NCBI RefSeq assembly: GCF_040938485.1
Contig: NW_027271528.1
Coordinates: 1,488,001-1,552,000 of the forward strand
Source of the DNA: Diadema antillarum
Taxonomy: Eukaryota
DNA: 64,000 bases
Direction of reading: 5' to 3'
This document shows, piece after piece, positions 1 to 57,400 of this stretch. The stretch's first letter is position 1; each line of letters opens with the position of its first letter. The notes under the pieces were generated by a model. That model had not been told where the DNA came from. It made no database searches and saw only the letters and a program-made list of their open reading frames with translations. A program made the position numbers and the translations under genes.

Positions 1-1734
1 TTTCCCCCGGAATATTTTTTTTTTTTGGACTTCTGCCTTCTGTTCTGTCGGAGGACATGTTCATGTGTTCTGAGAGAAATGGAAAGCCGGGACAGGGAAA
101 CACTCAAACCCATCATACAGGAGTGGTGCCTGCCAGGCACTCACATAATTACGGATGGATGGGCTGGATCCAATCACCTCCACACATTGGATCATGGTGT
201 CTATCTCCATGACGTCGTCATCCACCAACATCAGTTTGTGGACCCCGTGCATCGGAATATCCATACCAATGGAATCGAAGGGCTTTGGATGCATGGAAGC
301 GAAAGCTTGGCAGACAATACGGCACATACAGGGAGATGTTCCAAGGCTACCTAGATGAATTCATGTTCCGGTGGAAGAGGAGAGGATCGGGGAGATGCGT
401 TCTGAGAGAAATGGAAAGCCGGGACAGGGAAACACTCAAACCCATCATACAGGAGTGGTGCCTGGCAGGCATTCACATAATTACGGATGGATGGGTAGGA
501 TCTAATCAGCTCAACACATTGGATCACAGCGTCTATCTAGACGACATTGTCATCCACCAACATCAGTTTGTGAACCCCGTGCATGGGAATATCCATACCA
601 ATGGAATTGAAGGGCTTTGGAGGCACGTGAAGCGAAAGCTCCGCAGACACATACAGGGAGCTGTTCCCAGGATACCTAGATGAATCTATGTTCTGGTGGA
701 ATCTGATTAGTTCCACACATTGGATCACGGTGTCTATCTCCACGAGGTTGTCATCCACCAACATCAGTTTGTGGACCCCATGCACCGGAATATCCATGCA
801 CGTGAAGCAAAAGCTCCGCAGACAATACGGCACATACAGGGAGATGTTCCAAGGCTACCTTGACGAATTCATGTTCCGTAGGAAGAGGAGAGGATTGGGG
901 GGATGCGTTCTGAGAGAAATGGGCAGGATCTAATCAGCTCCACACATTGGATCACGGCATCTATCTTCACGACGTCGTCATCCACCAACATCAGTTTGTG
1001 GACCCCATGCTTTGGAATATCCATACCAATGGAATCGAAGGGCTTTGGATGCACGTGACGCGAAAGCTTGGCAGACAATACGGCACATACAGGGAGATGT
1101 TCCAAGGCTACCTGGATGAATTCATGTTCCGGTGGAAGAGGAGAGGATTGGGGAGATGCGTTCTGAGAGAAATTGAAAGCCAGGACAGGGAAACACTAGA
1201 ACCCATCATACAGGAGTAGTGCCTGTCAGGCTCCCACATAATTACAGATGGATGGGCTGCATACAATCAGCTCCACACATTGGATCACGGCGTCTATCTC
1301 CATGACGATTCCAGAGAGGATCGGGGAGATGCATTCTGGGAGAAATGGAAAGCTGGGACAGGGAAACACACGAACCCATCATACAGGAGTGGTGCCTGGC
1401 AGGCATTCACATAATTACGAATGGATGGGCTGGATCCAATCAGCTCCACACATTGAATCACGGCGTCTATCTTCACGACGTCGTCACTCACCAACATCAG
1501 TTTGTGGACCTGTGTATCGGAATATCCATACCAATGGAATCGAGGGGCTTTGGATGCATGTGAAGCGAAAGCTCCGCAGACAATACAGCACATACAGGGA
1601 GCTGTTGCCAGGCTACCTGGATGAATTCATGTTCTGGTGGAACAGCAATGCCGACATGTTCGGTCATCTCCTCTGTGCTATTAGAGAGCAGTACTTCGTC
1701 TCTCCATCTCCCCCTTCCTCTTCCTCTTCCTCTC

Positions 1735-4200
1735 TCATGATGCTGAGGCATCCACATAATATGGATGGACGGGCTGCATACAATCAGCTCCATGCTTTGG
1801 ATCACGGCATCTATTTCCATGACGATTCAAAAGAGGATTGGAGAGATGCGTTCCGAGAGAAATGAAAAGCTGGGACAGGAAGACATTCAAACCCATAGTC
1901 CAGGAGTAGTGCCTGCCAGGCATCCACATAATTACAGATGGATGGGATGGATACAATCAGCTCTACACATTGGATCACAGCATCTATCTCCATGACATCG
2001 TCATTCACCAACATCAGTTTGTGGACCCTGTGCATCAGAATATCCATACCAATGGAATCGAGGGGCTTTGGATGCACGCAAAGCGAAAGCTCCGCAGACA
2101 ATACAGCACGTACGGGGAGTCCAGGAGTAGTGCCTGCCAGGCATCCACATAATTACAGATGGATGGGATGGATACAATGAGCTCCACACATTGGATCACG
2201 GCATCTATCTCCACGATGTCATCCACCAACATCAGTTTGTGGACCCTGTGCATTGGAATATCCATACCAATGGAATCGAGGGGCTTTGGATGTACGCGAA
2301 GCGAAAGCTCCGTAGACAATATGGCACATACAGGGAGCCGTTCCTAGGCTACCTGGATGAATTCATGTTTCGGTGGAACAGCAATCATGCCGACATGTTT
2401 GGTCATCTCCTCAGTGCTATCAGGGAGCAGTATCCTGCCTAAATTCCTCACTCCCTCTCCCCCTTCCTCTTCATCTGTCAGGATGTTAAGGCATCCACAT
2501 AATCACAGATGGATGGGCTGCATACAATCAGCTCCACACTTTGGATCACGGCATCTATCTCCACGACGACGTCATTCACCAACATCAGTTTGTGGACCCT
2601 GTGCATCAGAATATCCATACCAATGGAATCGAGGGGCTTTGGATGCACGCAAAGCGAAAGCTCCGGAGACAATACGGCACGTATGGGGAGCTGTTTCCAG
2701 GCTACCTGGATGAATCTATGTTCTGGTGGAACAGCAATGCCGACATGTTCGGTCATCTCCTCAGTGCTATTACAGAGCAGTACCCCGTCTAAATTCCTCT
2801 CTCCATCTCTCTCATGATGCTGAGGCATCCACATAACATGGATGGATGGGCTGCATACAATCAGCTCCATGCTTTGGATCACGGCATCTATTTCCATGAC
2901 GATTCAAAAGAGGATTGGAGAGATGCGTTCCGAGAGAAATGAAAAGCTGGGACAGGAAGACATTCAAACCCATAGTCCAGGAGTAGTGCCTGCCAGGCAT
3001 CCACATAATTACAGATGGATGGGATGGATACAATCAGCTCTACACATTGGATCACAGCATCTATCTCCATGACATCGTCATTCACCAACATCAGTTTGTG
3101 GACCCTGTGCATCAGAATATCCATACCAATGGAATCGAGGGGCTTTGGATGCACGCAAAGCGAAAGCTCCGCAGACAATACAGCACGTACGGGGAGTCCA
3201 GGAGTAGTGCCTGCCAGGCATCCACATAATTACAGATGGATGGGATGGATACAATGAGCTCCACACATTGGATCACGGCATCTATCTCCACGATGTCATC
3301 CACCAACATCAGTTTGTGGACCCTGTGCATTGGAATATCCATACCAATGGAATCGAGGGGCTTTGGATGTACGCGAAGCGAAAGCTCCGTAGACAATATG
3401 GCACATACAGGGAGCCGTTCCTAGGCTACCTGGATGAATTCATGTTTCGGTGGAACAGCAATCATGCCGACATGTTTGGTCATCTCCTCAGTGCTATCAG
3501 GGAGCAGTATCCTGCCTAAATTCCTCACTCCCTCTCCCCCTTCCTCTTCATCTGTCAGGATGTTAAGGCATCCACATAATCACAGATGGATGGGCTGCAT
3601 ACAATCAGCTCCACACTTTGGATCACGGCATCTATCTCCACGACGACGTCATTCACCAACATCAGTTTGTGGACCCTGTGCATCAGAATATCCATACCAA
3701 TGGAATCGAGGGGCTTTGGATGCACGCAAAGCGAAAGCTCCGGAGACAATACGGCACGTATGGGGAGCTGTTTCCAGGCTACCTGGATGAATCTATGTTC
3801 TGGTGGAACAGCAATGCCGACATGTTCGGTCATCTCCTCAGTGCTATTACAGAGCAGTACCCCGTCTAAATTCCTCTCTCCATCTCTCTCATGATGCTGA
3901 GGCATCCACATAACATGGATGGATGGGCTGCATACAATCAGCTCCATGCTTTGGATCACGGCATCTATTTCCATAACGATTCAAAAGAGGATTGGAGAGA
4001 TGTGTTCCGAGACAAATGAAAAGCTGGGACAGGAAGACATTCAAACCCATAGTCCTGGAGTAGTGCCTGCCAGGCATCCACATAATTACAGATGGATGGA
4101 ATGGATACAATCAGCTCCACACATTGGATCACGGCATCTATCTCCATGACATCGTCATTCACCAACATCAATTTGTGGACCCTGTGCATCGGAATATCCA
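1735..4200 (+). repeat. Higher-order repeat, 1077-bp period (two near-identical copies plus a partial third)
   Basis: Whole ORF sets recur at exact offsets: 1735/2812/3889, 1765/2842/3919, 2191/3268, 2541/3618. Copies 1 and 2 differ by only a few substitutions. Confidence 0.9.
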
Positions 4201-6592
4201 TACCAATGGAATCGAGGGGCTTTGGATGCATGTGAAGCGAAAGCTCCGCAGACAATATGGCACACACAGGGAGCTGTTCCTAGGCTACCTAGATGAATTC
4301 ATGTTTCGGTGGAACAGCAATCATGCCGACATGTTTGGTCATCTCCTCAGTGCTATCAGGGAGCAGTATCCTGCCTAAATTCCTCTCTCCCTCTCCCCCT
4401 TACTCTTCATCTGTCAGGATGCTGAGGCATCCACATAATACGGATGGATGGGCTGCATACAATCAGCTCCACACTTTGGATCACGGCATCTATTTCCATG
4501 AGGATTCAAAAGAGGATTGGAGAGATGCGTTCTGAGAGAAATGAAAAGCTGGGACAGGAAGACATTCAAACCCATAGTCCAGGAGTAGTGCCTGCCAGGC
4601 ATCCACATAATTACAGATGGATGGGATGGATACAATGAGCTCCACACATTGGATCACGGCATCTATCTCCACGACGTCGTCATTCACCAACATCAGTTTG
4701 TGGACCCCATGCATCGAAAAATATTCATACCAATGGAATCGAAGGGCTTTGGATGCACGTGAAGAGAAAACTTGGAAGACTATATGGCACATACAGGGAG
4801 CTGTTCCTAGGCTACCTAGATGAATTCATGTTCCGGTGGAACAGCAATCATGACGACATATTCGGTCATTTTCTCAGTGCTATCAGGGAGCTGTATCCTG
4901 CCTAAATTCCTCACTCCCTCTCCCCCTTCCTCTTCCTCTCTCATGATGCTGAGTTCTTGCCATTCAAACGCAATGATAGTCTTTTAAACGTATTTGGTTC
5001 ATTGTAACCTCAAGAATTATAATATGGTAGCTAGTATCCTAAAGTCTCACTTAATAGCACAAAAAATTACATAATTACAGATGGATGGGATGGATACAAT
5101 CAGCTCCACACATTGGATCACGGCATCTATCTCCACGACGTCGTCATTCACCAACATCAGTTTGTGGACCCCATGCATCGAAAAATATCCTTACCAATGG
5201 AATTGAGGGATTATGGATGTACGCGAAGCGAAAGCTCCGCAGACAATACAGCACATAGAGGGAGCTGTTGCCAGGCTACCTGGATGAATTCATGTTCCGG
5301 TGGAACAGCAATCATGACGACATATTCGGTCATTTTCTCAGTGCTATCAGGGAGCTGTATCCTGCCTAAATTCCTCACTCCCTCTCCCCCTTCCTCTTCC
5401 TCTCTCATGATGCTGAGTTCTTGCCATTCAAACGCAATGATAGTCTTTTAAACGTATTTGGTTCATTGTAACCTCAAGAATTATAATATGGTAGCTAGTA
5501 TCCTAAAGTCTCACTTAATAGCACAAAAAATTACATAATTACAGATGGATGGGATGGATACAATCAGCTCCACACATTGGATCACGGCATCTATCTCCAT
5601 GACGATTCGAAAGAGGATCAGGGATATGTGTTCTGAGAGAAATGGAAAGCCGGGACAGGGAAACAATCAAACCCATCATACAGGAGTGGTGCCTGCCAGG
5701 CACTCACATAATTACAGATGGATGGGATGGATACAATCAGCTCCACACATTGGATCACGGCATCTATCTCCACGACGTCGTCATTCACCAACATCAGTTT
5801 GTGGACCCTGTGCATCGGAATATCCATACCAATGGAATCGAGGGACTTTGGATGCACGTAAAGCGAAAGCTTGGCAGACAATATGGCACATAGGCCTACA
5901 GGAAGATGTTCCAAGGCTACCTCGATGAATTCATGTTCCGGTGGAAGTGAAGAGGATCGGGGAGATGCACTCTGAGAGAAATGGAAAGCTGGGACAGGGA
6001 AACACTTGAACCCATCATACAGGAGTGGTGCCTGCCAGGCATTCACATAATTACAGATGGATGGGCTGCATACAATCAGCTCCATATATTGGATTACAGC
6101 GTCCACTTCCACGTCAATTCGTAAGAGGATCGGAGAGATGCGTTCTGAGAGAAATGGAAAGCTGGGACAGGGAAACACTCGAACCCATCATACAGGAGTG
6201 GTGCCTGCCAGGCATTCACATAATTACGGATGGGTGGGCTGCATACAATCAGCTCCATACATTGGATTACAGCGTCCACTTCCACGTCGATTCGTAAGAG
6301 GATCGGAGAGATGCGTTCTGAGAGAAATGGAAAGCCGGGACAGGGAAACACTAGAACCCATCATACAGGAGTAGTGCCTGTCAGGCACCCATATAATTAC
6401 AGATGGATGGGCTGCATACAATCAGCTCCACACATTGGATCACGGCGTCTATCTCCATGACGATTCGAAAGAGGATCGGGGAGATGCGTTCAGAGAGAAA
6501 TGGAAAGCCGGGACAGGGAAACACTCAAACCCATTATACAGGACTGGTGCTTGCCAGGCATTCACATAATTACAGATGGATGGGCTGCATAC

Positions 6593-7198
6593 CCAGTGGG
6601 TAAAGGAACAATCTAAGAAAGTTCGTGATCATGTACCTTCCCGCCACGGGATACGCCACTGCTGGACGAAAATTACTCCCTGATCTCAAACGTCGGGGAA
6701 GTGCCCCATATCCCGACTTCAAACTGCAACGAAGACGTGGGAGAAACAAGTGGTACAGGAAATTCACTCAAACCAGCGCCTCTTCCAACTGGGCAGAAGC
6801 TGCCCAAACGGAAGGCCACGTTGTCGAAAATGGGCACCGACTCCGACACCGAGGACAAACTTTTGGAGGCCATCTCGACCTTGGATGCCCGTCTCTCTGC
6901 GGAAATAGCCGAATTTAGGGCGGAAGTGAAAGCTGTGGAGAATGCCGTCACTTCCTTGACAGAGCTCGTTGAGGGAAAGGGGGGATGATGCAAGAACTTA
7001 CGCGGAACATATTCAAGCTAGCTTCACCTTGGGAGTCAACCACCTGGCTTCATTGCTTGGGAAGCAAAAGAGAAAAATACATCAGGCGTCGTCTCTCCTA
7101 ACCGAACTGATTACTGATGACAGTGAATAACTTTCCCCAGGAATATTTCTTTTTCTTTTGGACTCTGAGTGCCTTCTGTTCTGTCGGAGGACATGTTC
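6593..7198 (+). pseudogene. Foreign ~600-bp module, copy 1: frameshifted 3' end of an unrelated ORF (acidic linker, coiled coil, helical C-terminus)
   Basis: ORF 6701-6988 reads SDTEDKLLEAISTLDARLSAEIAEFRAEVKAVENAVTSLTELVEG. A frameshift at the G-run continues as DDARTYAEHIQASFTLGVNHLASLLGKQKRKIHQASSLLTELITDDSE*. It is not Merlin-like and loosely resembles MADF/BESS-type accessory-protein C-termini. Confidence 0.45.
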
Positions 7199-7480
7199 GT
7201 GCGTTCTGAGAGAAATGGAAAGCCGGGACAGGGAAACACTAGAACCCATCATACAGGAGTGGTGCCTGCCAGGCACCCACATAATTACAGATGGATGGGC
7301 TGCATACAATCAGCTCCACACACTGGATCACGGCGTCTATCTCCATGACGATTCAAAAGAGGATCGAGGAGATGCGTTCTGAGGGAAATGGAAAGCCGGG
7401 ACAGGGAAACACTCAAACCCATTATACAGGACTGGTGCTTGCCAGGCATTCACATAATTACAGATGGATGGGCTGCATAC

Positions 7481-8086
7481 CCAGTGGGTAAAGGAACAAT
7501 CTAAGAAAGTTCGTGATCATGTACCTTCCCGCCACGGGATACGCTACTGCTGGACGAAAATCACTCCCCGATCTCAAACGTCGGAGAAGTGCCCCATATC
7601 CCGACTTCAAACTGCAACGAAGACGTGGGAGAAACGAGTGGTACAGGAAATTCACTCAAACCAGCGCCTCTTCCAATTGGGCAGAAGCTGCCCAAACGGA
7701 AGGCCACGTTGTCGAAAATGGGCACCGACTCCGACACCGAGGACAAACTTTTGGAGGCCATCTCGACCTTGGATGCCCGTCTCTCTGCGGAAATAGCCGA
7801 ATTTAGGGCGGAAGTGAAAGCTGTGGAGAATGCCGTCACTTCCTTGACAGAGCTCGTTGAGGGAAAGGGGGGATGATGCAAGAACTTACGCGGAACATAT
7901 TCAAGCTAGCTTCACCTTGGGAGTCAACCACCTGGCTTCATTGCTTGGGAAGCAAAAGAGAAAAATACATCAGGCGTCGTCTCTCCTAACCGAACTGATT
8001 ACTGATGACAGTGAATAACTTTCCTCAGGAATATTTCTTTTTCTTTTGGACTTTGAGTGCCTTCTGTTCTGTCGGAGGACACGTTC
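7481..8086 (+). pseudogene. Foreign ~600-bp module, copy 2 (tail of a further copy at window positions 1-64)
   Basis: Near-identical to 6593-7198. Bases 1-64 match its 3' end (tttccc..gaatattt..gccttctgttctgtcggaggacatgttc). Confidence 0.5.
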
Positions 8087-9213
8087 ATGCGTTCTGAGAG
8101 AAATGGAAAGCCGGGACAGGGAAACACTAGAACCCATCATACAGGAGTGGTGCCTACCAGGCACCCACATAATTACAGATGAATGGGCTGGATCCAATCA
8201 GCTCCACACATTGGATCAAGGCGTCTATCTCCATGAAGATTCGAAAGAGGATCGGGGAGATGCGTTCTGAGAGAAACTGAAAGCCGGGACACGGAGACAC
8301 TCAAACCCATAGTCCAGGAGTGGTGCCTGCCAGCAGGGAGGTGAGCTGCCAGGCACCCACATAATTACAGATGAATGGGCTGGATACAATCAGCTCCACA
8401 CACTGGATCACGGTGTCTATCTCCATGACGTCGTCATTCACCAACATCAGTTTGTGGACCCCGTGCATTGGAATATCCATACCAATGGAATCAAGGGGCT
8501 TTGGATGTACGCGAAGCGAAAGCTGCGCAGACAATATGGCACATACAGGGAGCTGTTCCTAGGCTACCTGGATGAATTTATGTTTCGGTGGAACAGCAAT
8601 CATGCCGACATGTTCAGTCATCTCCTCAGTGCTATCAGGGAGCAGTATCCTGCCTAAATTCCTCACTCCCCCTCCCCCTTCCTCTTCATCTGTCAGGATG
8701 CTGAGGCATCCACATAATATGGATGGATGGGCTGCATACAATCAGCTCCACACTTTGGATCACGGCATCTATTTCCATGACGATTCAAAAGAGGATTGGA
8801 GAGATGCGTTCCGAGAGAAATGAAAAGCTGGGACAGGAAGACATTCAAACCCATAGTCCAGGAGTAGTGCCTGCCAGGCATCCACATAATTACAGATGGA
8901 TGCGATGGATACAATCAGCTCCACACATTGGATCACAGCATCTATCTCCATGACGTCATCCACCAACATCAGTTTGTGGACCCTGTGCATCAAAATATCC
9001 ATACCAATGGAATCGAGGGGCTTTGGATTCACGCGAAGCGAAAGCTCCGCAGACAATATGGCACATACAGGGAGATGTTCCCAGGCTACCTGATGAATCT
9101 ATGTTCCGGTGGAACAGCAATCACGGCGACATGTTCGGTCATCTCTTCAGTGCTATCAGGGAGCAGTATCCCGTCTAAATTCCTCTCTCCCCCTCCCCTT
9201 TCCTCTCCATCTG

Positions 9214-9336
9214 TCATGATGCCGAGTTCTTGCCATTCAAATGCAATGAGAGTCTTTTAGATATTTTTGGTTCATTGAAACCTCAAGAATTATAAGGTTG
9301 CTACTACCCTAAAGTCTCACTTGATAGCACAAAAAT
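9214..9336 (+). repeat. AT-rich post-stop (3' UTR/flank) module of the Merlin-like element; further copies at ~4943-5067 and ~5407-5531
   Basis: catgatgc(t/c)gagttcttgccattcaaa..cctaaagtctcactt(a/g)atagcacaaaaa occurs three times after the YP(A/V)* stop module. The last copy runs into unique sequence. Confidence 0.75.
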
Positions 9337-9988
9337 CTTCACATTTGTTATATTACCTCTCAATTCATTTGCGGATTTATCAATAATGCCATGTAAAAAA
9401 GCATCATGTACACCAAAGCAGGGACTATGGAGTCCAGACTCAATGATACAGGCCTGCAAAGCAGTGACTGATGGCACACTTGGTCTCCGATTTCGTATTT
9501 TAAATTTCAGGAGCATAATTCCATGCAGAGTGTTTAAAGCATTTGATTTGTGATTTAGCATCATTATTGTTGCAGCCAATAGGTCAAAATTAATCTGTTA
9601 CATGGCAAATTGTTGGTTGAATTGGGACTCTCTAGGACTAATTAATTTGTAGATTGCATTTCAAACAACATGTAAACTTATGCACATGTATTCCAAGCAA
9701 TCTACAATCTTACATTGCTCTAATGAACAATTTCAGAATTTCTTGTAACATATATCATTTTTCTTGCATTTTTTAAAATCTTGAGCAACTTTCCAGTATT
9801 GCTCAAAAAGACAAACATTAATCACTTTACACAAATGTAAAAAGCTTATCACGTTATAACGCAAGTTTTGTATTTCACCGTTCTTGTGATTTTGTAGAGC
9901 TGCAAAGATGCAAGGAAAAGTGTGAATCATTTCACAAATATAAAAAGTTAATATCACGTTACAAAGCAAGTTTTGTATTTCACTAAAA

Positions 9989-10078
9989 CACACATGAGGC
10001 TTTGAAGAGCACTCACTGTAAGATGACTACGGCAATGAGAGAGCAGTGTCCTGACTCAAAATATTGTCTAGATACATG
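9989..10078 (+). repeat. Solo copy of the 84-bp minisatellite unit
   Basis: aggctttgaagagcactcactgtaagatgactac..gtcctgactcaaaatattgtcta at 9997 matches the units at 14311, 14395 and 14479. Confidence 0.9.
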
Positions 10079-10196
10079 TAGCCCAAGTGGCTATGAGCAC
10101 ATAAAATCAGCAACAGCACAGTAGTTTTTCCTAGTTGACCTGTGATGCAAAGTTGGACGCAATCTTCAGTTGGTTTTCACAAAATAGTATTCGAGG

Positions 10197-10781
10197 ATGG
10201 AGACAGAAGACACAGAAATGTCCATCCACGATATTAAGCTCTGGACGGTTGACGCACTGAAGGCGTTTCTTCGTCAGAGGAACTTGAAAGTGAGCAGCCA
10301 TAAGGAGGAACTCGTGGCTTCAGTGTTCGCTGCCAAAACAATGCCGGAGCTTTTGGCGCCAGGTACCTTAGCAGCTGTTGCAGACCTGCAGAAGAGACAG
10401 CATTGTGGATACCTTCTCAAGACGCCGTTTGGAAAGCTACCTGATCCCCAGGAATTACAAGACTGGGAGTCTGAATCAGACTCGATAACCAAGTGGCCAC
10501 CCACAATGACTTTCGAGATATGCAATTTTCTTCAGAGCATCGATGATATCCCGCTATGGAAAAGACTAATTTCAGACTACAAAGATCAGAAAGCATACAG
10601 CTATTTCGCATCTGGATGGATGAATGAAATTGAGTACCATGCCATTGCCCCTGACAGCAAATACTGTTTCCTAAGAGCAAAGTGCACACCTTCACAGCGC
10701 ATTCGTGGTATCCCTCATAGCATGTGGGATGCTGTAGAGAAAGAGAGCGGAGCAGATTACGCAGAGATATGTGATGAGTAA
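10197..10781 (+). pseudogene. Truncated transposon-associated ORF: SAP-like N-terminus and the region preceding a SWIM finger (YqaJ/lambda-exonuclease-associated type)
   Basis: WTVDALKAFLRQRNLKVSSHKEELVASV is SAP-like. KAYSYFASGW..YCFLRAKCTPSQR..PHSMW..VEKESG is typical of the segment directly before the A-x-C-x-C SWIM motif, but the ORF diverges and stops there. Confidence 0.6.
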
Positions 10782-12437
10782 GATGTTCAATTGTCTTCAG
10801 AAGAAAGAAAATTTGTTTGTAATCTAGTCTCTGTTTCAGACCTACAGGAAGGCAGGTCGTTGAATAAATATGCTGTTAACAGCATTGATATTATCCATGT
10901 AAATTTATCATTCTTCTGCATTCTATATTCGCTGTCGTGAATATTGGGTTCTTTTCTAACTTATGGAAATTTGTTGATGATTGGTGTTTATGTGATTACC
11001 TAACCCCTGACCAGTACAGAGAAAAGCTAACAGAACAGACCAATATTTATCCGCCTCTGTACATTATCGGTCACCTCTTGAGACAATTTGGGGTTGGGGG
11101 GGGGGGGGGGGTTAGACTGAACTCACAACCTTCGCGTTATCAGCACGATGCTCTCATATTTTTGTGTTAAGTGTAATATACTGTAACCACCCTATGGTAC
11201 AATAGGTTAGAGAGGGAGACTAGCTTCTCTTGGAATCTATTATGACGTAAATTTTACCTCCTTACATTTCCTTATTGTCTGCTTAACTGCTCATACTTAT
11301 ACTTATCTCCAACCTTACTACGTTTAGCTACTAGAGTGTATACGTCAGTGTCAAAGAATCTCAATTTGCTTTGGCGATCCAGCTATCTTTGTCCCTGTGG
11401 AAGCATAACACTACTTCAGACAAGGTTTAGTGGCATCTATTATTACAACAATAGATGACATTGATCGATTTATCATTATTATGTCATACTTGAAATATTC
11501 TCTGAAACTTAGCGATTATCGTTAGGTATCACTTACCAATGTTGACACTATAGTCAATGTATCCAGTAGTTGTCATTGATGATGAATAGACTTTTATAGG
11601 CTCCATTAGTTTCACGTTGATAACTTTGATAATTATTGTTATAGAGTTGGAAACTTCGTTGTGAGGTATTATCAGGAAATTCCCTTCATGATAAATCCAT
11701 GTGTTTAACGGTTTGACATTTCCTTAGAATAACGGAGCTGCTAGAAAAGTACGTGTTTCTCCTTCAGAAGTAACCTTGAAATGACAGAGTTTACGTAGTT
11801 TGTCGTTTACGCATTACACATTACGCGCGTCCTATAGCGGACAGTGCGCGTAGACTGTACAGTGCGGAGTTTTATGCATGAAAGCAGAGGTTGACCTGCC
11901 GTATCCAAAACCTAGAATATCAAAACTCATATTATTGTTTAAATTCAATCTTATACACTGAGGAAAGTATCTGGTTACCGACATAAATGATAATTCCACG
12001 GAAGTCTTTGATTGGATTAACGTACAAATATTTCAATTCTATGAATTAAGACATGTTATGACGGATCGGTTGTAAGCCCGTGTATAGCTATGTATTGGAG
12101 GCATGTATTGACGTGCATTATACGGTAGTGAGGTTCGGGGAAATTTCCTCGTTTTTGGCCGTACAGTTTGAATTTGAAGATTCTTTGGAATAATTATAGT
12201 AATAATCTGAGAAAGAATGTTTTTCTCTTCTCTTTGATGTATGTGTAGCATTATAGGCTATTCCAGTTTTTAATATTAAGGAAGTTTTGGTAGTCAAAGA
12301 AACACACTTTAGTTCGCACTGGCAATTCTACGTGTCGAACGTACGGACTCCGCGTCCGCGTAGGAGTGCTCTCTCCAACGTCCACATAAGGTGTATAAAT
12401 ACCGTAAAATTTTAGGCAGCTTGGGAGAGCGGGGGAG

Positions 12438-13588: not shown

Positions 13589-14905
13589 GTGGCAATGAGC
13601 AATATGGCAAACATGTGGGGCGACTGTACGGTGTATGTTAAGAATCTCCCAGAGAAATGTAGTGACAATAATCTGAATGATTTCTTTAATTTGGAAGAAG
13701 TGGAGATTTCCTTTGAGAAAGACTCTCTGATGGGTGAGATGACTGGGTCTGCACACTGCAACTTTAAAACTGCAGAGGATGCAACCAAGGCACTTGCCCA
13801 AAACGGCAAAGAACTTAAAGGAAGGAAAGTAGAAATTATGTGAGGTACCCTTTTCAGCCCTATTCTTAAAAGCAACATCCCAATCAATCCCCTAAAATGT
13901 CCTGTCCCTTAGTCCAAGCACTGCCCCCTTAATCCTCCAGAACAGTGCACGGCTACCAAATTTTTCGGGAGACAAGAGAAAGGGGAGGATTGGACGTCAC
14001 ATTTGAAATGTGAAGGTACGAGGTCGAGTGCCTCCAGAAGGACCAGGACAATATTTCCTTGGGGTTAATTGTGAGGAAATCATTACGTGGTGTGATGAAG
14101 CAGGTCAGATCGTCCTCCACATGGGACCTGATGCCTCGGTAGACGAGATTATAACAGAACTAGAGGGACTTTACGGGACTGTGGAATCAGGTGCTGTCCT
14201 CCTTCAGAAGCTATATGACTCAAAACAGGGAGAAGATTAGAACATTGCAAGCTTTTGTGCCCACTGGCAAATCTCGTTTGATAAGGGGGTTTGGGGTTTA
14301 GACACATATAAGGCTTTGAAGAGCACTCACTGTAAGATGACTACTGCAATGAGAGAGCAGTGTCCTGACTCAAAATATTGTGTAAACACATATGAGGCTT
14401 TGAAGAGCACTCACTGTAAGATGACTACTGCAATGAGAGAGCAGTGTCCTGATTCAAAATATTGTCTAAACACATATAAGGCTTTGAAGAGCACTCACTG
14501 TAAGATGACTACTGCAATGAGAGAGCAGTGTCCCGACTCAAAATATTGTCTAAACACAATTGTTGTTCTTCTAAATAAAAAGGCCAGTCATTTGAAGTCA
14601 ACAGGAGAGCTATACCCCACAACCAACCACACACCCCACTCAACCACAAAATCTAAACTGCTGGAGGTGTGGGCAATTTTGCCACTTCCGGTCCAACTGC
14701 CCCCAAAGCAACATACCCCACCAAGAGGACGTCATGAGTGGAAGGACGGACGCCCTTCATCAGGTCCGGAATTTAAACTGGGCAGGCCCGCGCCGGATGT
14801 AGGCGAGTGCGCGGGCAAATAGGACAACCCAATTAAACCCCGCCCCCCTCATCAAAGTTTCCCGATAATTGGCCCCACCAATACGGACAGGGTACTCATT
14901 ATACT
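13589..14905 (+). mobile_element. Decayed Gypsy/Metaviridae LTR retrotransposon gag (RRM + PNMA-like capsid + CCHC knuckle) and start of pol protease
   Basis: RRM: TVYVKNLPEKCS..TGSAHCNFKTAEDATKALAQNGKELKGRKVEI (13589-13843). Capsid-like: RLPNFSGDK..HMGPDASVDEIITELEGLYGTVESGAVLLQKLYDSKQGED (~13950-14240). Knuckle: NLNCWRCGQFCHFRSNCP (~14656-14705). PIIGPTNTDRVLI (~14862-14900) resembles the pre-protease segment. Stops and frameshifts are present. A candidate LTR end/PBS (TGTAACA-GTGGCGC) lies at ~12932-12946 (weak). Confidence 0.75.
14298..14558 (+). repeat. 84-bp minisatellite, three tandem copies, interrupting the gag relic
   Basis: Units start at 14311, 14395 and 14479. They create the repeat KSTHCKMTTAMREQCPDSKYC(V/L)NTY(E/K)AL in ORF 14316-14822. 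Confidence 0.9.
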
Positions 14906-24800: not shown

Positions 24801-26705
24801 GTGATCTCAACTCATTATGAATGTGTGTCAATTTGTTTCTACTAAACATCCACTACTTTAACACAGAAATCATGTTACACAATCTAATGCTTGACAGTAT
24901 CAGTACATTGTTCTTCTGTACTTCTGTAACAACACTTGTGAGAATATAACTCATTAACCACAACTGCCTACAGCGACAGCAAAAAGGTATAATACACTGT
25001 ACATCCCTACCATTCCGCTATACATCCATTCCATACTTCTAAGGCACAAGCACATACTGCTTACAGAATGAGAGAGAAAGAGAGAGAGAGAGGAGAGGGA
25101 GAGGAAAGGGAGAAGAGAGAGGGGAGAGAAAGAGGAGAGAGAGAGAGAGACCAGTGTGCATGGGGCATCGCTGGCTTCTTCTTTGTCTACTCCCATTTGT
25201 CTACAGAGATTTGGCAAATCAAATCCTGCTCTGTAAATATTCCTTACAATCTACTCATTCACTAACATGATCACACACATCATCATAAGCTATAAAACAT
25301 TGTAAAGAAGTTAGTTTCTTACCAAATTCGGGCCTGTTGTTTTCCCACAAAACTTGAACAAACTTGTTAGACTGCTGCAACTTCGCAAGCTTTCACTGGA
25401 ACTCTGAATACTGTCACTAAACAGCTTGCCACTTCCACCCATAATACTGTATACATGTACAACACACAAAGCCCTATTGCTGTACGAAGTGAATGGTGGA
25501 TTGTTAATACTTTCTCTAAAAGTAAAACAAGGGGGTAATTGTTCAATGTTTACATTAGCCTCCTGGGGTAGGGGTCTTATCTTTCATTGAACACATGTAG
25601 TCTGCAAATTTAGACCTGTTTAACACTTACTAGTTTTCAATCCTAGACCCATTTTGTAGGACAAAATTATACCAAATTCTCACTGCACACTGCTGCAGTG
25701 ACAACAAGCACATAGAAAATTTGACGAAAATAACTAGCCACTGTGATCAACCGTTAGACGGTTTCGAAATGATCCCACAGATGGTGCTGAAACAATTTCT
25801 GACGACAGGGAATTCCAGTTCCTTACAGTTCTTGGGAAGAATGAATGGCGATGCGATTCAGTTCTCGAATATGGTACCCGATAGGACTAGGAGTGTGGTT
25901 GCGAGGCTCTCGTCAACTGAGTAGCCTGTTTGATAATATAGTCCTGTGCTGAAAGAGGAGTAAGATTATTGTGTATTTTGAACATCATAATGAGCCTGTC
26001 ATTTTTTCTGCGCTGTTCCAGAGTGGTCCAATCAAGTTCTTGTAGCATTTTGGTGACACTCATTTTGATTTCCACAACATAGCATCTTTCGTCCTCCCTT
26101 TCTTCTCGGAAGGACTCCCTAACGTCCCTCGACTAATTTAACGGCCAATTTAACCATAAATACAACCCTACCTAACCCTACCATAAACCTAACCCTATCC
26201 CTACGAACTACATGTACCCTTGTTTGCTATTATTAACGCACGGGTGCACGCGCACTGTAGTGGGGCCTACAATTTCACCATTTTGCCCATAATAAGGAAC
26301 TCTTTCCAAATTTTTAGTCAATCTTAAAATTAAGTTGGACTTCGTGAAACACCCCCACAGCCCAGGCCCAGGCCCCTCATCCCCAGCACCCCGCTTTGCC
26401 CTTGGTCTTTTTGGCTTTGGACATTTTACTTAGAGTGTAATAGGCCCTGTGCTGTAGGCTGTAATGTAAAATTTAATAGATGCTGAATAAGCCTAACGAC
26501 TAGACTACACGTTAAATTTACTTGCCTACTCTAACGCTACACTACACTACAGTACAGTTTGTCCATTTTTAACTGCGACAAGCCAGCTCAGCACTAAACT
26601 GGTAATTCTCTTTCTGGCTGGAACACTAAACATGAATTATGAATTACATCAACACGCGGAATACTCACCAATAATGTTTGGGACGTACAAGAAAACAGAT
26701 GTCAT
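15854..26705 (-). CDS. CDP-alcohol phosphatidyltransferase class I, phosphatidylinositol-synthase-like, 198 aa, 7 exons, complete
   Basis: Exons (-): 26669-26705, 22687-22785, 21787-21842, 21180-21236, 20029-20149, 17294-17466, 15854-15907. All introns are GT-AG, phases join, total 597 nt. Protein MTSVFLYVPNIIGYVRLLL..DGVDGAVARKLKQTSAFGAWFDVVIDNLGRG..EKNFKTLPGTFAILGLFVLPLWLY..KENEK* carries the full D-x2-DG-x2-AR-x8-G-x3-D-x3-D signature and a PIS-like VPN-x-IGY-x-R start. Confidence 0.92.
16629..17193. mobile_element. ~565-bp MITE with long TIRs, TTAA-type flanks (Kolobok-like non-autonomous family), copy 1
   Basis: TTAA|AGGAAATCAAAACC..GCAGCAATATTAGTAGAACACAT is mirrored at the right end. 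Same family as 30447-31013 and 54918-55476. Confidence 0.8.
17661..18087. mobile_element. HINE/DINE-like (Helentron-associated) non-autonomous element
   Basis: Begins ttattacctccgccaagggaggaggttatgtttt, contains a (GTTT)n tract, and ends ttggaagaggtccacgctctccgaaagcttttctagt. Confidence 0.55.
18418..19612 (+). mobile_element. Pearl/HINE-like modular element: subterminal inverted repeats, (TGACCTT)n cores, (GACG)n microsatellite, 3' hairpin
   Basis: 5' GTCGC-tatg-GCGAC hairpin, and ATGCCTCCGCC at ~18448 mirrored by GGCGGAGGCAT at ~19557. Internal ttgacctt arrays, (gacg)n at ~19470-19520, and a duplicated 3' hairpin. Confidence 0.7.
21570..21674. mobile_element. ~100-bp TTAA-flanked mini-element (piggyBac-like ends); second copy at 56801-56886 in opposite orientation
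   Basis: Shared core AACAC..ATTTCCCATAGA..GCCCGAGTA-ACTCGGGACT and a TCAACGGG|TTAA terminus in both copies. Confidence 0.6.
21893..22010. repeat. (ATR)n degenerate trinucleotide microsatellite
   Basis: gataataatgataataat.. tract in intron 2 of the - strand gene. Confidence 0.85.
25068..25150. repeat. (GA)-rich microsatellite
   Basis: Purine-only gagagaaagagagagagg.. tract. Confidence 0.9.
25734..26075 (-). mobile_element. 5'-truncated LINE (CR1/L2-group) ORF2 C-terminal remnant
   Basis: SVTKMLQELDWTTLEQRRKNDRLIMMFKIHNNL..*SYRVPYSRTESHRHSFFPRTVRNWNSLSSEIVSAPSVGSFRNRL is a typical post-RT C-terminus with an internal stop. Confidence 0.8.
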
Positions 26706-27484: not shown

Positions 27485-30400
27485 ATGGTTATTCAATGCC
27501 TGTTCTTCATCATGGAGGAGAAAAATCTCCCTAAATTGGGTGTTTTTATCCTTTGTCTGGCTCACACCTCCATCGTGTCTTGCTCAGCGCTTTCGTTACC
27601 GGAACCATGGAAGAGCCTCCCCGGACTTTCGGGCGACGAAATGTCCTATGTTCGGTCCCGATTCGAACGCGCCTCGTCCTCAGCTGCTACAGATATTGAC
27701 ACGACTTACTACCATAGCTACGACGATCTCACTAATCTTTTAGGCAAGTATGCTGTAGATTATCCTGACATCACACGTCTTTCGAGCATCGGTCAGAGTG
27801 TTAGAGGGAAGGAACTCTGGGTTATGCAGATCACAGATAACCCTGATATTGTAGAAAGTGAGGAACCGTGGTTCAAATATGTTGGAAACATGCATGGAAA
27901 TGAAGTAATCGGACGACAAATCTTGATTTACCTGATTGAGTATCTTCTTCAAAATTACGGAAAGGACAAGCGGGTCACACGACTTGTGAACAACACAAAC
28001 ATCTTCATCATGCCAACTATGAATCCGGACGGATTCGCCACTGCCACTGTGGGAGACTGCAATGGGGTGCATGGCCGATCAAACGCAAATAATGTGGATC
28101 TCAATCGCAACTTCCCGGACCAGTTCCACACACGAACAGGAGACAAATGGAAGGGCCGCCAGCCGGAGACAGAACTGATGATGAGGTGGATTGAGGACAA
28201 CCCGTTTGTACTGTCTGCGAACCTGCACGGGGGGAGCCTGGTGGCTAGCTACCCCTTTGACGATTCCCGACCGGGCCGCGGCCGCACACAGGCAAAGTAC
28301 AGCAAGTCTCCAGACGACACCCTGTTCCAGGAACTGGCCAGAACGTACGCAAACAACCACCGTACAATGCATAGCACGACTGGTTGTCCCGGCTATGCCA
28401 ATGAAGCATTTCCTGGTGGGATCACCAATGGAGCAGCGTGGTATGATGTTCCAGGTAAAGGCAACATCCAGAGTTTTATATAGTCATCATAATATAGCAG
28501 ATAATGTGGGGTTTCCCATATGATGTAAGTTTTTCCAGATTTAACGATAAATTAAGTACACATCATAGTTCTAGATGCATTCAGTCTAAACCTCAGTGCT
28601 ATAAATGAAACTTCATGAGAGAACTTTGTTTTCTTTGAGATGAAATGGTTTGAAAGAAAGTGTACAAGGGATAAAGATTTCGTAAACTTTTAATCAGATG
28701 GACACGAAGCCTACTTATGAAGTACATGTACAGTATGTGTGGTTTGAATAGAGTTGAATTCTTGCAGGCCACTTTTTGCATATGAGTGGAAATCAATGTA
28801 AATTGAGTGAATGTAGACCTATGATAGCATCTATGACTCCTCATACAGCTGTATGATGTGCTCAATCAGGTGATGACATTTAGGGAATTCTTGGGTATAT
28901 CCCACCAAATGATACTCTACAAGATAAAATGTGAAGTGTTTCACTCTTGTTTCTGTGTCATTAACAAATTAAGGTAAGTATTGATAGAAATGATAGGCTT
29001 TGGAATATCCCATGTTTCTTGTCATTCATTCCATTATGTTCATTTTCCAGGAGGGATGCAGGACTTTAATTACCTCAACAGCAACTGTTTTGAAATCACA
29101 GTGGAGTTATCATGCTGCAAGTATCCCGTGGTTGCACAGCTTGCCCCAGAGTGGCGTAACAACAGGGAAGCCCTCATAGCATACATGGAAAAGGTGAGAA
29201 TTTTCCAGTCTCACATTAATTGAGGCAAATTAATAGACATCATGACTAAACACTTTCTTGGTTTTAAACTTCAATGTACAAAGCAGTCACTAAACTTTAA
29301 TGTGCCCTTTGATACACTTTTATAGATTTTCATTGAAACTTGCCAAGCTGTGAAAGTGGCATTTGCAGAATGATGTGTGCTACACCTTTACATGTTTTAT
29401 TGACCAACTTGATCATTGAGCTCAAATGAAATGCCTTTTGTTTTGTTTTGTTTTGTTTCTTGTTTATCATCATCATATAGTGTAATCTTCAACAAGACAA
29501 GGAAGATGTTGTGATACGTGTGTGCACAGTGTGTTCAAGGCAAGGGTAATATGTGCACTGGACATGCACCATTGCCCACATTCATGTTTTGATGCTTTTT
29601 CTACGTGAGCAACCTCGTCCGTGTTGTTGTGTACGATGGTTTCACCAGCTGCTGTGCCAGCTGATACTGAATGAGTTTCTTGATGACATATCCCCCTGTC
29701 TGGGCATCATGTGCTGTTTCTGACTGAATTATCAGCAAACCTCAACAGCCCCAAACTATCCTTCACTCAGTCATCAAAGGCAAAGCCTTCCAGACAGTGT
29801 CACGGCTAACAAACATTTAGGTTTTCAAAAGTTAAAGGATCGCAAAATCCCTCCCCCCCCCCCCCCCCCCCCCCATGCTATGACAATTGCTGATCACTGC
29901 CAGCCATGGAAGATAGGACACTGACAACTTGTCATGCTGAGTGGCCAATGATAAGAAGAAAAAAAAAAAGATACTGCCACTGATGATATCTATACTAAGG
30001 GAATACAGCATTTTATTGTTTTGCTAAGGACCAATCTGAACTGAGAAATTGATCAGGATGAGGAAATATATTTACCGTAATTGACACCTAATATTGCTAG
30101 GGCTTGAAGCTTTAATACAGTCTCGTATGACAGTGCATGACCATACTGGAATTATATACTCAAGCATCAATTCTGAACAGCACCGAAACAAGACTCTGTT
30201 ATACGTAATGTGCATCCTTTTTCAATGACACCATAAAGCCATGGTGCAGAAGCTTTTTCTTTGCAGATTTAACCCTCGGCCTCTGTATGCTTTGAGTGCA
30301 GATTAGCACAGAATACCCTATTCATTAAAACACACTCCCTAAAGTTCCTTGTACATAAATGGTTATGGCAGTGCCACTTCCTGGCTCATCATTTCCTGTC

Positions 30401-54400: not shown

Positions 54401-57400
54401 AAAGAGAGAGAAGGTCTTTCAAATGAAAGGTACTGCTTCATTGAATGTTATTCTTGGATTGATGAGAACAATCTCAGTCTTAGTGATAAGGTCTTGTAGA
54501 GCCATGATTTGTAGAGCCGTACTTTGTATCGGTTTGTATAATAATGCTGTGCATTCACACTAGGTCCCCTCTTCCCCATCCTGTCCCTGTGAAGTCAAGA
54601 TGGGTCCAGGGACAAAATTTGGAAGAAAGAGTGATCTTGGGCTGTAATTGATAGCACCCAGCTGTATAAATCAAATGTGCGCATGTGCTAAGTCTGGTGT
54701 CGAGCGGCAGGGTTCGTCCTGAGCCCCGATTGCCCCTGTCCCAAGCCCTGATTGCCCCTGCCCCGCAGTTTAAGGAAAGCAGTGTGGACAGTCAGTCATA
54801 AAAAAGATAAGATCTCTACTGAATGTCCCCGCGATGCAGCGTCTAGTGACAGGGACAGTCCCCATGTTCACATTGGACCTCACGTCATGGAGACAGTCAC
54901 AAGAGATCTTACATTAAAGGACAAGTCCACCTTCATATACATAAGGATTGAGAAAATGCAGCAATATTAGTAGAACACATCAGTGAAAGTTTGAGGAAAA
55001 TTGGACAATCCATTCAAAAGTTATGAAAATTGTAAGTATCTGCGCAGTCACTGCTGGAAGAGAAGACTACTACAGTGTATGATGTCACATGCGTACAACT
55101 ATATAAGGAAAATAAAAAGAGAATTTCACAAAACTTTACTTTTTGAATAAAGTGCACATTTCTTCGACTTGCTACTGACATATGTTAAGTGTAATATTAT
55201 TCCCCCTGCCTTCTGAAAGAGAGAAGTCAAGTGTTCTTTTGTTGTGCGAGAAAAATGGAAATATGTTGAATTTTCTTTATTCTTTCTTTATATCGTTGTA
55301 CTCATGTGACATCACAAGCTATAGTAGTCTTTTCATCCAGCCGTGACTGAGCAGAAACTTCAAAAATTCATAACTTTTGAACGGATTGTCCGATTTTGCT
55401 CAAACTCTCAATGATGTGTTCTACTAATATTGCTGCATTCACTCAACCCACATGTCCATGAAGGTGAACTTGTCCTTTAATTGTATCTTTTTTATGACTG
55501 AGCGTCCACACTGCTATCTCAACTGTCCCTGAGCTGCAGGGGCAATTGGGGTTTGGGGCAAGCCCTGCAACTTTACACCAGACTTTACGCATTTGCACAT
55601 TTGATGAATACAGCTGGGGGCTAAAATTACTGCCCAAGGTCACTCTCCCCTCTCAGTTCTTTCCCCAGGACTGGACTTGCTTCGCGGGGATGAGGGGACA
55701 AGTCCCAGAGAGCATTCACATTGTAGTTTTTGAGGAGAAAGTCCCACAGTCCGGGACTGTCCCCATGTTGCAGGGACTAATGAGAACGCGGGAAATATCA
55801 CCTTGACCTGTTGGTCCCTCACCAACCCTTACTCTTTGTTCCCCTTCCTGCCCCGGCAGCTTTCATCGAGCCATCCCCGATCCAGCATCACAGCCAGGAG
55901 ACCACGGTCGTCTTCCTTCAGGACCTGACGGCCCGCTACCCCAACATCAGCCGTGTCTACTCCATCGGCGCGTCAGTCCAGGACCGGCAACTGATGGCCA
56001 TCGAGATCAGCGACAATCCGGGAGGCCATGAACCAGGTAGGCCACCTGGGGTGGGGGTTTGTTTTCTTTTCCTTCTGTTTATTGTCTCCTTGTATTCTCA
56101 GTATGTAGGCATATAGGCTGCGTTTGTCTAACTTGAGAGAGAAAATCACGTTTCAAAACGCGTTTGAATTGGTGTTTGCGAACGTAGTTTGAAACGCTTT
56201 TCTGGGGGTGCCACGTTTAACTAACCATCATACAATCGAGTGTTGTCACTGTGTAGCTACTTTGCGCCGTTCGACCTGGGAAGTAAAGGTCAACTGCGAA
56301 CCAGCAAACATGCCTTGATCATCAGTCACACACAAATAATGGGTAGGTAGAGAGCACAACCGGAAACAGCTGGGTTTGACCTTGAGATATAAACACGTTT
56401 CAAAATGGCATTGCGTTTATCTACTCACAGAATGGCGATCGTGGTCTCAAACGCGTTTCAAAAAGCCCTTTGAAAGGCATTTCAAAACACCGTTTAAAAC
56501 GCATTTGAAAACACGGTTGCGTTTATCTAACCCATGAAATGCTTCAAACGCATTTTTTATCGTGATTCTGCCTTAGAAAATTTTTAGATAAACGCAGCCG
56601 TAGTGTCAAAATAAGGTGAAGTGAAAGATAGCGGGTGAGTCAGATAGGATCCAGATATCCTCGTGTCCACTCCCCCTTTGATCCCCACCTGAAGAGGAAT
56701 AATAGGTAAGGTAAGGGAGGGGACTGGTTAGGCCCCAAAAGTCAAATTCTTCTATCCTGACCTCTTCCCCTCCTAGGCATCCCCAATCTGCAACTTCACA
56801 TTAACCTCGGGCTGATTTTGCTACAACACGCATTTCCCATAGAGACCTTGCCCGAGTATACTCGGGACTCGTCGTCAACGGGTTAAAAGATGGGGTAAGG
56901 TACGGTATGGATTAATTGGGATACAGGTTGAGGTTTATCTTGACTCATCCCTTTCCAATCCCAAGCTCACTAACCCTTTGTGTACACTCTGTACCTCAAG
57001 TGTTGGTTGGCACAGAAAACCCCTTAGCATGGTACACACTGTCTATAGTCCCTAGCGTAGAAATGGTTAAAGGGAAGCAGTCCAGAGATTTTCACTGTAC
57101 TGATAATTAAGAAGAGTAAAAAATATAACCTTTCACCAATTTATATGCGTGGACATCAAAAATTGTCTCCGTACGCGATTTTTAAAAAATAATTCCTGCA
57201 AGCGATCCGTGTAAGAGCCTGCCAAAAGGTGCAACGTCATTGATGCCCTACTCTCAAGTTGACAGCCGTGCCTCAGAAAACCAATTTAAGTGTTCAAAAT
57301 GATCATATCTGATTTTTTCATAAAATGTGACAATATGTGGTTTTATTATTTCAAACAAAATATTTCAAGCTTATTTATATATACAATTAATATGAAAATA

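What the first reader, a model, noticed from the sequence alone, without database searches (positions are those of the whole stretch)
1..9336. A >9-kb satellite built from the catalytic C-terminal half of a Merlin/ISXO2 transposase
Seen: almost every base derives from one ~400-bp stretch of transposase CDS plus its 3' flank, reiterated about 17-30 times depending on the sub-module, all in one orientation. No TIRs, TSDs or N-terminal half are visible; only the second Asp (TDGW) and the Glu (GIEG) of the DDE triad are present. Established: TE-derived satellites usually come from TIRs, UTRs or MITE cores, and amplification of the catalytic CDS is less typical. Inference: this may be a new satellite family, a silencing (small-RNA) template against Merlin elements, or a scar of repeated abortive transposition or rolling repair.
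Basis: partly seen in the sequence, partly recalled or inferred. Interest (0 to 1): 0.78.

Follow-up and report, generated by a model that had tools for sequence, protein, structure and literature searches.

The report
Local tandem array of dead Merlin transposase pieces
A 9.3-kb stretch of this sea-urchin genome is a decayed jumping-gene fragment copied head-to-tail about 30 times at one spot by repeated local duplication. It is a clear but ordinary example of how dead transposons turn into tandem repeats.

Summary
Window 1-9336 consists of 32 same-strand fragments of one 561-bp master, which covers Merlin/IS1595 transposase aa ~194-325, about 50 bp of 3' UTR and 115 bp of unique flank.

Copy depth is 29 over the second catalytic Asp, 17 over the Glu and 10 at the C-terminus. 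Pfam PF12762 matches at E 1e-10 to 1e-11.

It is not a satellite family. The monomer occurs only here and in a collinear, much shorter copy on contig C365, most likely the other haplotype of a two-haplotype Diadema antillarum assembly.

About 35 junctions reduce to 9 founder junctions with 0-4 bp microhomology. These were propagated by nested higher-order duplications of 173, 464, 888 and 1077 bp, at 90 to 99.9% identity. Some duplications include unique flank and the gypsy piece, so host-side duplication built the array, not transposition. The copies decay near-neutrally.

An intact 325-aa relative at 77-80% nt identity exists elsewhere. A silencing role is untested. The same Merlin lineage formed a second coding-fragment array (C733/C1033), and another Merlin lineage a third cluster (C713/C1102). 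A piggyBac control showed none.

The parts
1..62 (+). 3' end of the first Ty3/gypsy-derived piece L; the rest lies upstream of the window at C640:1487014-1488000
63..1828 (+). Oldest, most diverged block: 9 Merlin fragments (master 18-337, 4-334, 128-337, 4-33, 114-337, 4-169, 4-446, 92-169) at 75-94% identity to the master
1829..3982 (+). Two copies of a 1077-bp higher-order unit (four fragments each), 1076/1077 identical: the youngest duplication
3983..4507 (+). Fragments master 1-446 and 92-167
4508..5068 (+). Longest uninterrupted copy, used as master: transposase aa ~194-325, stop at 4903-4905, ~50 bp C/T-rich 3' UTR, 115 bp unique flank
5069..5604 (+). 464-bp duplicate of master 98-561 (95.3%) plus a 72-bp restart; this duplication includes the unique flank
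5610..5946 (+). Fragment master 2-334
5950..6592 (+). 3.7 copies of the 173-bp unit (aa ~194-251, holds the TDGW Asp), 90-95% identical to each other
6594..7200 (+). Piece L copy 2: end of a Ty3/gypsy integrase plus a downstream coiled-coil ORF, with a ~450-bp internal deletion relative to the upstream copy and to C247
7201..7480 (+). Fragments master 20-169 and 1-126; together with the L piece they form an 888-bp higher-order unit (6468-7354 vs 7355-8243, 97.5%)
7482..8086 (+). Piece L copy 3 (98.5% to copy 2)
8087..9336 (+). Terminal block: master 18-167, 2-446, 92-169, 1-558; runs into unique DNA at 9336. The same end architecture is present on C365

Best explanation
This is a single-locus, non-coding tandem-duplication complex that grew out of one dead Merlin (IS1595-like) transposon copy.

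**How it formed.** A copy of a now-extinct subfamily decayed in place. It was interrupted by other repeats and joined to a fragment of a Ty3/gypsy element. A handful of illegitimate joins with 0-4 bp microhomology, of the replication-slippage, template-switch or end-joining type, created short direct duplications of its C-terminal coding part. Once direct repeats existed, unequal exchange or slippage between them re-duplicated ever larger composite units. This gave nested higher-order repeats of different ages and an array whose length differs between the two haplotypes.

**Function.** The array encodes nothing and most likely has no function.

**Shown here.** Single origin, junction re-use, nested duplication ages, near-neutral decay, restriction to one locus, and a length difference between the two copies.

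**Inferred.** The molecular mechanism of the joins and the allelic status of C365.
For: **Orientation and tiling.** All 35 segments are on one strand and tile 98.8% of 1-9336.

**Junction re-use.** About 35 junctions fall into 9 sequence-identical classes. One example is master 169 joined to master 1, which occurs 12 times at the same base. Independent events would not hit the same base repeatedly.

**Nested units of graded age.** 1077 bp at 99.9%, 888 bp at 97.5%, 464 bp at 95.3%, 173 bp at 90-95%, and older fragments at 75-88%.

**Non-Merlin DNA inside the duplications.** They include unique flank (master 447-561, three copies; the flank occurs nowhere else in the genome). They also include a gypsy-derived piece (Integrase_p58_C, E 3.7e-10 in the C247 paralogue).

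**Microhomology at founder joins.** TGCG at the L-to-Merlin join and AG at two others.

**Single origin.** All copies form one clade separate from the intact relative. Monomer subtypes are shared with C365, and each locus also has private identical duplicates.

**Relation to C365.** C365 is collinear with C640 over more than 75 kb at 92-98% identity, but its main Merlin block is only ~2.7 kb. The assembly statistics match a published 1.73-Gb, 2,964-scaffold D. antillarum assembly with 84.4% duplicated BUSCOs and a 703-Mb haploid estimate.

**Decay.** Differences fixed between the array and the intact relative are 7/7/32 by codon position, so the founder came from a once-functional subfamily. 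Within-array variants are 58/43/74, near-neutral, and every frame is broken by stops and frameshifts.

**Distribution.** The monomer occurs nowhere else in the 1.75-Gb assembly at 80% identity or more.
Against: - No read-level evidence: the published HiFi reads average 6.8 kb at about 11x, so no single read spans the array and its exact length is unverified.
- Within-array variants still show a mild third-position excess (p=0.013).
- Three independent Merlin coding-fragment arrays against none among 116 scored piggyBac matches hints at something Merlin-specific that plain host-side duplication does not explain.
- A small-RNA or chromatin role cannot be excluded with sequence alone.
Confidence: 0.75

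Rival explanations
1. The first duplications were made by the transposon's own biology: template switching or slippage during gap repair after Merlin excision, or rolling-circle copying of an excised circle. This would make Merlin relics in this genome unusually prone to become coding-fragment arrays. Later growth by unequal exchange would be the same as in the best explanation.
For: - Same-strand arrays of Merlin coding fragments occur at three independent loci. C640/C365 carries aa 194-325. C733/C1033 carries aa 60-184 of the same lineage, with units of 394 bp (98.5%), 993/1361 bp (~95.5%) and 2354 bp (99.8%). C713/C1102 carries another Merlin lineage with 454-bp spacing.
- C733 and C640 share only coding homology at 75-83% identity and no flanks, so they arose independently.
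- About half of all PF12762 matches in the genome lie in such arrays.
- A control family, piggyBac, shows no such cluster among 116 scored matches.
- Founder joins have short microhomology.
Against: - Duplications include unique host flank and a gypsy fragment, which a transposon-internal process does not predict.
- No TIRs or TSDs are present to show that the relic was ever excised here.
- Three loci against zero is a weak statistic, and 47 piggyBac candidates were not scored.
- Earlier notes of this scan report satellites inside many other transposon types in this genome, so tandem amplification may simply be general (unchecked).
Confidence: 0.15
2. The array is, or is part of, a uni-strand small-RNA (piRNA-type) source locus that silences Merlin elements.
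For: - All Merlin relics over ~15 kb lie on one strand.
- No intact element of the founder's own subfamily survives in the assembly.
Against: - One-strandedness is an automatic result of tandem duplication from one founder.
- The array is only 77-80% identical to the intact relatives.
- CpG depletion and composition are the same as in the surrounding DNA.
- There is no small-RNA, expression or methylation evidence.
Confidence: 0.07
3. The array length is an assembly artefact: dispersed or fewer copies were strung together or over-expanded.
For: - Coverage is low (~11x) and HiFi reads are short (mean 6.8 kb) in the published assembly.
- One 1077-bp unit is duplicated with a single mismatch.
Against: - Most units differ by 3-25%, enough for HiFi reads to place them.
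- An independently assembled contig (C365) shows the same junction classes and the same unique end.
- There are no other copies in the genome from which a chimaera could be built.
- The only N run in the window is 51 kb away.
Confidence: 0.05

Closest known systems
Tandem repeats or satellites derived from internal parts of transposable elements (review PMC12628747)
   Same: The review states that tandem repeats can arise from central segments of DNA transposons and from gag/pol of retrotransposons, through microhomology-mediated duplication followed by expansion. The array here is such a case: direct repeats, nested higher-order units and decay.
   Different: This array stays at a single locus. 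It has no homogeneous monomer and only ~30 fragments, so it is at most a proto-satellite. Its source is the catalytic coding region, not TIRs, UTRs or a MITE core.
Internal tandem repeats of Merlin elements (PMC8101967)
   Same: The paper reports tandem repeats inside several Merlin families and proposes Merlin as a carrier of proto-satellites. The intact relatives here also sit next to a 213-bp tandem repeat.
   Different: The published cases are non-coding 5' or 3' repeats carried by mobile copies. Here the repeat is the transposase coding sequence of an immobile relic, and the 213-bp repeat is unrelated to it.
Tandem arrays of truncated Helitrons (Xiong et al., as summarised in PMC12628747)
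   Same: Head-to-tail arrays of truncated copies of one transposon, with over-representation of one part of the element.
   Different: The Helitron arrays are explained by rolling-circle transposition and are inserted as arrays at new sites. Merlin is a cut-and-paste DDE element, and this array includes host flank and sits at a single site.
Bari1 heterochromatic cluster of Drosophila melanogaster, and satellite birth from double insertions (from my own knowledge, not checked here)
   Same: A DNA transposon sequence, including transposase coding sequence, organised as a tandem array at a single locus.
   Different: Those arrays consist of full-length end-to-end elements. Here the units are internal fragments with illegitimate junctions.

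Membership tests
Merlin / IS1595 (ISXO2-like) transposon-derived sequence | Match to the DDE_Tnp_IS1595 domain (PF12762) above the curated cut-off | tested here: met
   Five open pieces score 33-44 bits against a cut-off of 27, at E 5e-8 to 2e-11. A sixth piece scores 24.8 bits, below the cut-off. The intact relative scores 72 bits.
Merlin / IS1595 (ISXO2-like) transposon-derived sequence | Complete DDE triad | tested here: not met
   Array units start at aa ~194 and hold only the second Asp (TDGW) and the Glu (GIEG). The first-Asp region survives only in relics upstream of the window. The intact 325-aa relative has all three.
Merlin / IS1595 (ISXO2-like) transposon-derived sequence | Terminal inverted repeats starting with GG, and 8-9-bp target duplications | tested here: not met
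   No inverted repeat bounds the complex. The ends of the intact relatives could not be found in the DNA fetched.
Satellite DNA family | One monomer repeated head-to-tail with high homogeneity | tested here: not met
   Fragments run from 30 to 561 bp with 9 junction classes, and identity to the master is 75-100%. Only a 3.7-copy run of 173 bp is monomeric.
Satellite DNA family | High copy number, usually long arrays at several loci | tested here: not met
   The monomer is found only at C640 and its collinear counterpart C365. All 13 first-look candidates were scored.
Locus-specific higher-order tandem duplication (proto-satellite) | Re-use of identical junctions and nested units of graded age | tested here: met
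piRNA cluster | Dense strand-biased 24-31-nt small RNAs mapping to the locus | not testable with these tools
   No small-RNA data are available. Only the one-strand arrangement is seen.

The most novel reading that the evidence does not exclude
Merlin relics in Diadema antillarum are converted, by a process tied to the element itself, into same-strand arrays of transposase coding fragments. Candidate processes are template switching during repair of excision gaps, or rolling-circle copying of excised DNA. This would explain three independent loci for Merlin and none seen for piggyBac, and such arrays might then serve as uni-strand small-RNA sources against the family.
Probability: 0.12. Interest if true: 0.55.

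Novelty: new member of a known kind. Interest (0 to 1): 0.3.

Why it matters
The locus preserves the steps by which a dead transposon becomes a tandem repeat. These are a few illegitimate joins, then nested re-duplication of composite units, with the two haplotypes differing more than three-fold in the length of the Merlin-derived block. It is also a practical warning for annotation. About half of the Pfam Merlin-transposase matches in this assembly are array fragments, not elements, so copy counts from domain hits overstate Merlin abundance. It does not change what is known about transposons or satellites, unless the recurrence at three Merlin loci turns out to be element-specific.

Tried and rejected
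- **Genome-wide satellite.** Rejected. DNA searches with the monomer, the L piece and the 3' flank find the monomer and flank only on C640 and C365. The L piece has dispersed gypsy-type relatives.
- **Coding or domesticated gene, or exon array.** Rejected. Every frame is broken, within-array variation is near-neutral, and the intact relative is intronless.
- **Known RNA family.** None found in window 1-12000.
- **Relation to the 213-bp repeat next to the intact relatives.** None.
- **TIR search.** Nothing usable in the intact relatives or around the array. The only inverted pair (67 bp, 76%) bounds a separate 3.7-kb stretch upstream.
- **Special CpG or methylation signature.** None. CpG observed/expected is 0.57 inside the array and 0.57 outside.
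- **mariner control (PF01359).** It gave no matches anywhere, so it is uninformative.
- **More DNA from C365, C1033 and C713.** Those arrays are therefore known only from match coordinates, except the 10 kb of C733 that I held.
- **Exact-protein look-up of a neighbouring gene to name the organism.** Nothing found.
- **Large protein database searches.** Not used, because Pfam settled the family.
Full report
**Where the window lies.** The window is C640:1488001-1552000 of a 1.75-Gb assembly in 2963 contigs. Earlier notes of this scan name the animal as the sea urchin Diadema antillarum (unchecked AI notes). I checked this indirectly. A preprint describes a D. antillarum assembly of 1.73 Gbp in 2,964 scaffolds, with a stated length beginning 1,754,675 and 38.5% GC. 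It reports 84.4% duplicated BUSCOs, a k-mer haploid estimate of 703 Mb, 2.52% heterozygosity, and HiFi reads averaging 6.8 kb at about 11x. The size and scaffold number fit G000. The one-scaffold difference of about 15.7 kb is the size of the mitochondrial genome (inference). The assembly therefore very probably holds both haplotypes.

**The observation.** Reading window 1-9336 shows the same coding phrases over and over. I took the longest uninterrupted copy (window 4508-5068, 561 bp) as master M and window 6594-7200 as a second master L, and tiled the region greedily with BLAST.
- 9221 of 9336 bases are assigned, to 32 M segments and 3 L segments, all on the + strand.
- About 7.2 kb derives from coding sequence, 0.4 kb from a C/T-rich 3' UTR, 0.34 kb from unique flank and 1.27 kb from L.
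- Copy depth along M is 16-20 at the start, 29 over the TDGW region, 17 over the GIEG region, 10 at the C-terminus and 3 in the flank.
- Two motif searches give 24 and 15 + strand hits against 0 expected.
- Open pieces hit Pfam PF12762 at E 2e-11 to 4e-10, over profile positions about 46-153 only.

- 14% of the stretch is not Merlin.
- The structure continues upstream of the window.
- The far end of the '3' flank' is unique host DNA.

**The parent.** The genome holds an intronless 325-aa Merlin transposase with all three catalytic regions, at C165:1407835-1408809 and C2120:51968-52942. A frameshifted copy lies on C1132.
- The array is 77-80% identical to these copies in DNA, and its units correspond to aa ~194-325.
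- Differences fixed between the array and the intact copy fall 7/7/32 on codon positions 1/2/3. The founder therefore belonged to a separate subfamily that was once under selection.
- Variants within the array fall 58/43/74, close to neutral, and all frames are broken.
- All array copies form one clade apart from the intact copy, which indicates a single origin.
- No intact element of the founder's own subfamily was found.

**The non-Merlin piece L.** L has dispersed relatives on C247, C1139, C1348 and other contigs. The C247 copy shows that L is the end of a Ty3/gypsy integrase (Integrase_p58_C, E 3.7e-10) followed by a small coiled-coil ORF. The join of L to Merlin lies at a shared TGCG. A fuller L copy, with ~450 bp that the two internal copies lack, sits just upstream of the window and ends at window base 62.

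**Upstream of the window.** Same-strand Merlin relics of aa 50-167 and 166-223 lie at C640:1482272-1482791, and relics of aa 196-229 and 167-242 at about 1486558-1486916. They are separated by 3.7 kb bounded by a 67-bp inverted pair, probably a nested element. The whole complex therefore spans about 15 kb, and it does contain the first-Asp region outside the reiterated part.

**How the array grew.** The roughly 35 junctions fall into 9 classes whose sequences are the same at every occurrence.
- M169 to M1, 12 times; this makes the 173-bp unit.
- M337 to M4, 4 times.
- M446/415 to M90, 7 times.
- M291 to M69, M561 to M98 and M126 to L1, twice each.
- L605 to M18, 3 times.
- Two junctions that occur once.

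Microhomology at the founders is 0-4 bp (TGCG, AG, AG and others).

Composite units were then re-duplicated.

| Unit | Identity between copies |
|---|---|
| 1077 bp | 1076/1077 |
| 888 bp (contains L) | 97.5% |
| 464 bp (contains unique flank) | 95.3% |
| 173 bp | 90-95% |
| Left-hand block | 75-88% to the master |

Monomer subtypes follow their position in the higher-order unit, not their neighbourhood. This is the signature of a few illegitimate joins followed by unequal exchange or slippage between the resulting direct repeats. Because unique flank and a gypsy fragment are carried along, the growth is host-side duplication and not repeated transposition.

**Only one locus, in two versions.** The monomer and its flank occur only on C640 and on C365:405.5-410.8 kb.
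- C365 is collinear with C640 on both sides over more than 75 kb at 92-98% identity, with insertion differences.
- It carries the same junction classes and the same unique end, but its main Merlin block is only ~2.7 kb, arranged as two 1.7-kb units.
- Subtypes are shared between the two loci, and each has private identical duplicates.
- Given the duplicated assembly, C365 is most likely the other haplotype.

Under that reading the array predates the haplotype split and has kept changing since. This independent contig also argues against a gross mis-assembly, although no read-level check was possible.

**Recurrence.** The protein search shows a second array of the same lineage made of aa 60-184, at C1033:652-659 kb and C733:1079.8-1086.8 kb. 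In the 10 kb of C733 that I held, it has the same nested design, with units of 394 bp (98.5%), 993/1361 bp (~95.5%) and 2354 bp (99.8%), all direct. It shares only coding homology with C640.

A third same-strand cluster from another Merlin lineage lies at C713:2316-2330 kb and C1102:96-109 kb, with three hits 454 bp apart. A piggyBac control shows no such cluster among 116 scored matches. This is suggestive of a Merlin bias but statistically thin. Earlier notes report satellites inside many other transposons of this genome (unchecked).

**Comparison with what is known.** A recent review lists central segments of DNA transposons and gag/pol of retroelements among the sources of tandem repeats, and describes microhomology-based expansion. 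A survey of Merlin reports internal tandem repeats in several families and proposes them as proto-satellites. The present array is a new example of that kind. It is unusual only in using the catalytic coding part, and in showing its history so clearly. It fails the tests for a satellite family (no single monomer, one locus). It passes the tests for Merlin derivation (domain match) but not for a Merlin element (no triad, no ends).

**Function.** Nothing in the sequence suggests a function.
- No Rfam match.
- CpG depletion equal to the surroundings.
- No intact ORF.

A small-RNA role cannot be tested here. One-strandedness follows from the mode of growth and is not evidence for it.

**Verdict.** Confidence in the local-duplication reading is about 0.75. 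Interest is low to moderate.

Noticed in passing
G000 C165:1407835-1408809 and C2120:51968-52942 (L035:5835-6809 minus strand; L033:5965-6942 minus strand): Two intact 325-aa Merlin transposase ORFs that share several kb of flanks. Between them pS is 0.109 and pN 0.018 (pN/pS 0.17), so the ORF is under purifying selection. It is either an active family or a domesticated gene. A 213-bp tandem repeat lies upstream of all three copies.
   Followed up: partly
G000 C1033:652312-659355 and C733:1079877-1086789 (part in L036): A second same-strand array, made of aa 60-184 of the same Merlin lineage. It has nested units of 394, 993/1361 and 2354 bp (the last at 99.8% identity), and many of the ~125-aa matches have no stop codon.
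   Followed up: partly
G000 C713:2316474-2329553 and C1102:96491-109291: A cluster of at least 8 same-strand fragments of another Merlin lineage, three of them spaced 454 bp apart. Known only from match coordinates.
   Followed up: no
window 57068-57642: A ~575-bp element 98-99% identical to more than 40 copies across the genome and absent from the collinear C365 sequence: a young, probably still mobile short element with an insertion difference between the two copies.
   Followed up: no
window 26068-26290: A ~220-bp dispersed repeat with dozens of copies at 79-88% identity.
   Followed up: no
G000 C640:1482779-1486489 (L038:2779-6489): A 3.7-kb stretch between Merlin relics, bounded by a 67-bp inverted pair (76%) and with a ~510-bp palindromic core. 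A related piece lies downstream of the intact Merlin ORF on C165. Probably a nested non-autonomous element.
   Followed up: no
window 10197-10781: A 194-aa open frame starting with a SAP domain (PF02037, E 1.5e-5), directly downstream of the array on the same strand. Whether it is a gene or a transposon part is not resolved.
   Followed up: partly
window 14302-14558 and 9990-10075: An 84-bp tandem repeat (3.1 copies, 96%) with a solo copy 4 kb upstream, near the end of the array.
   Followed up: no
window 27485-28483: A 332-aa open frame that looks like the N-terminal part of an M14 metallocarboxypeptidase. This is from reading the translation and was not tested. It is a useful anchor for finding the orthologous locus in other urchins.
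   Followed up: no
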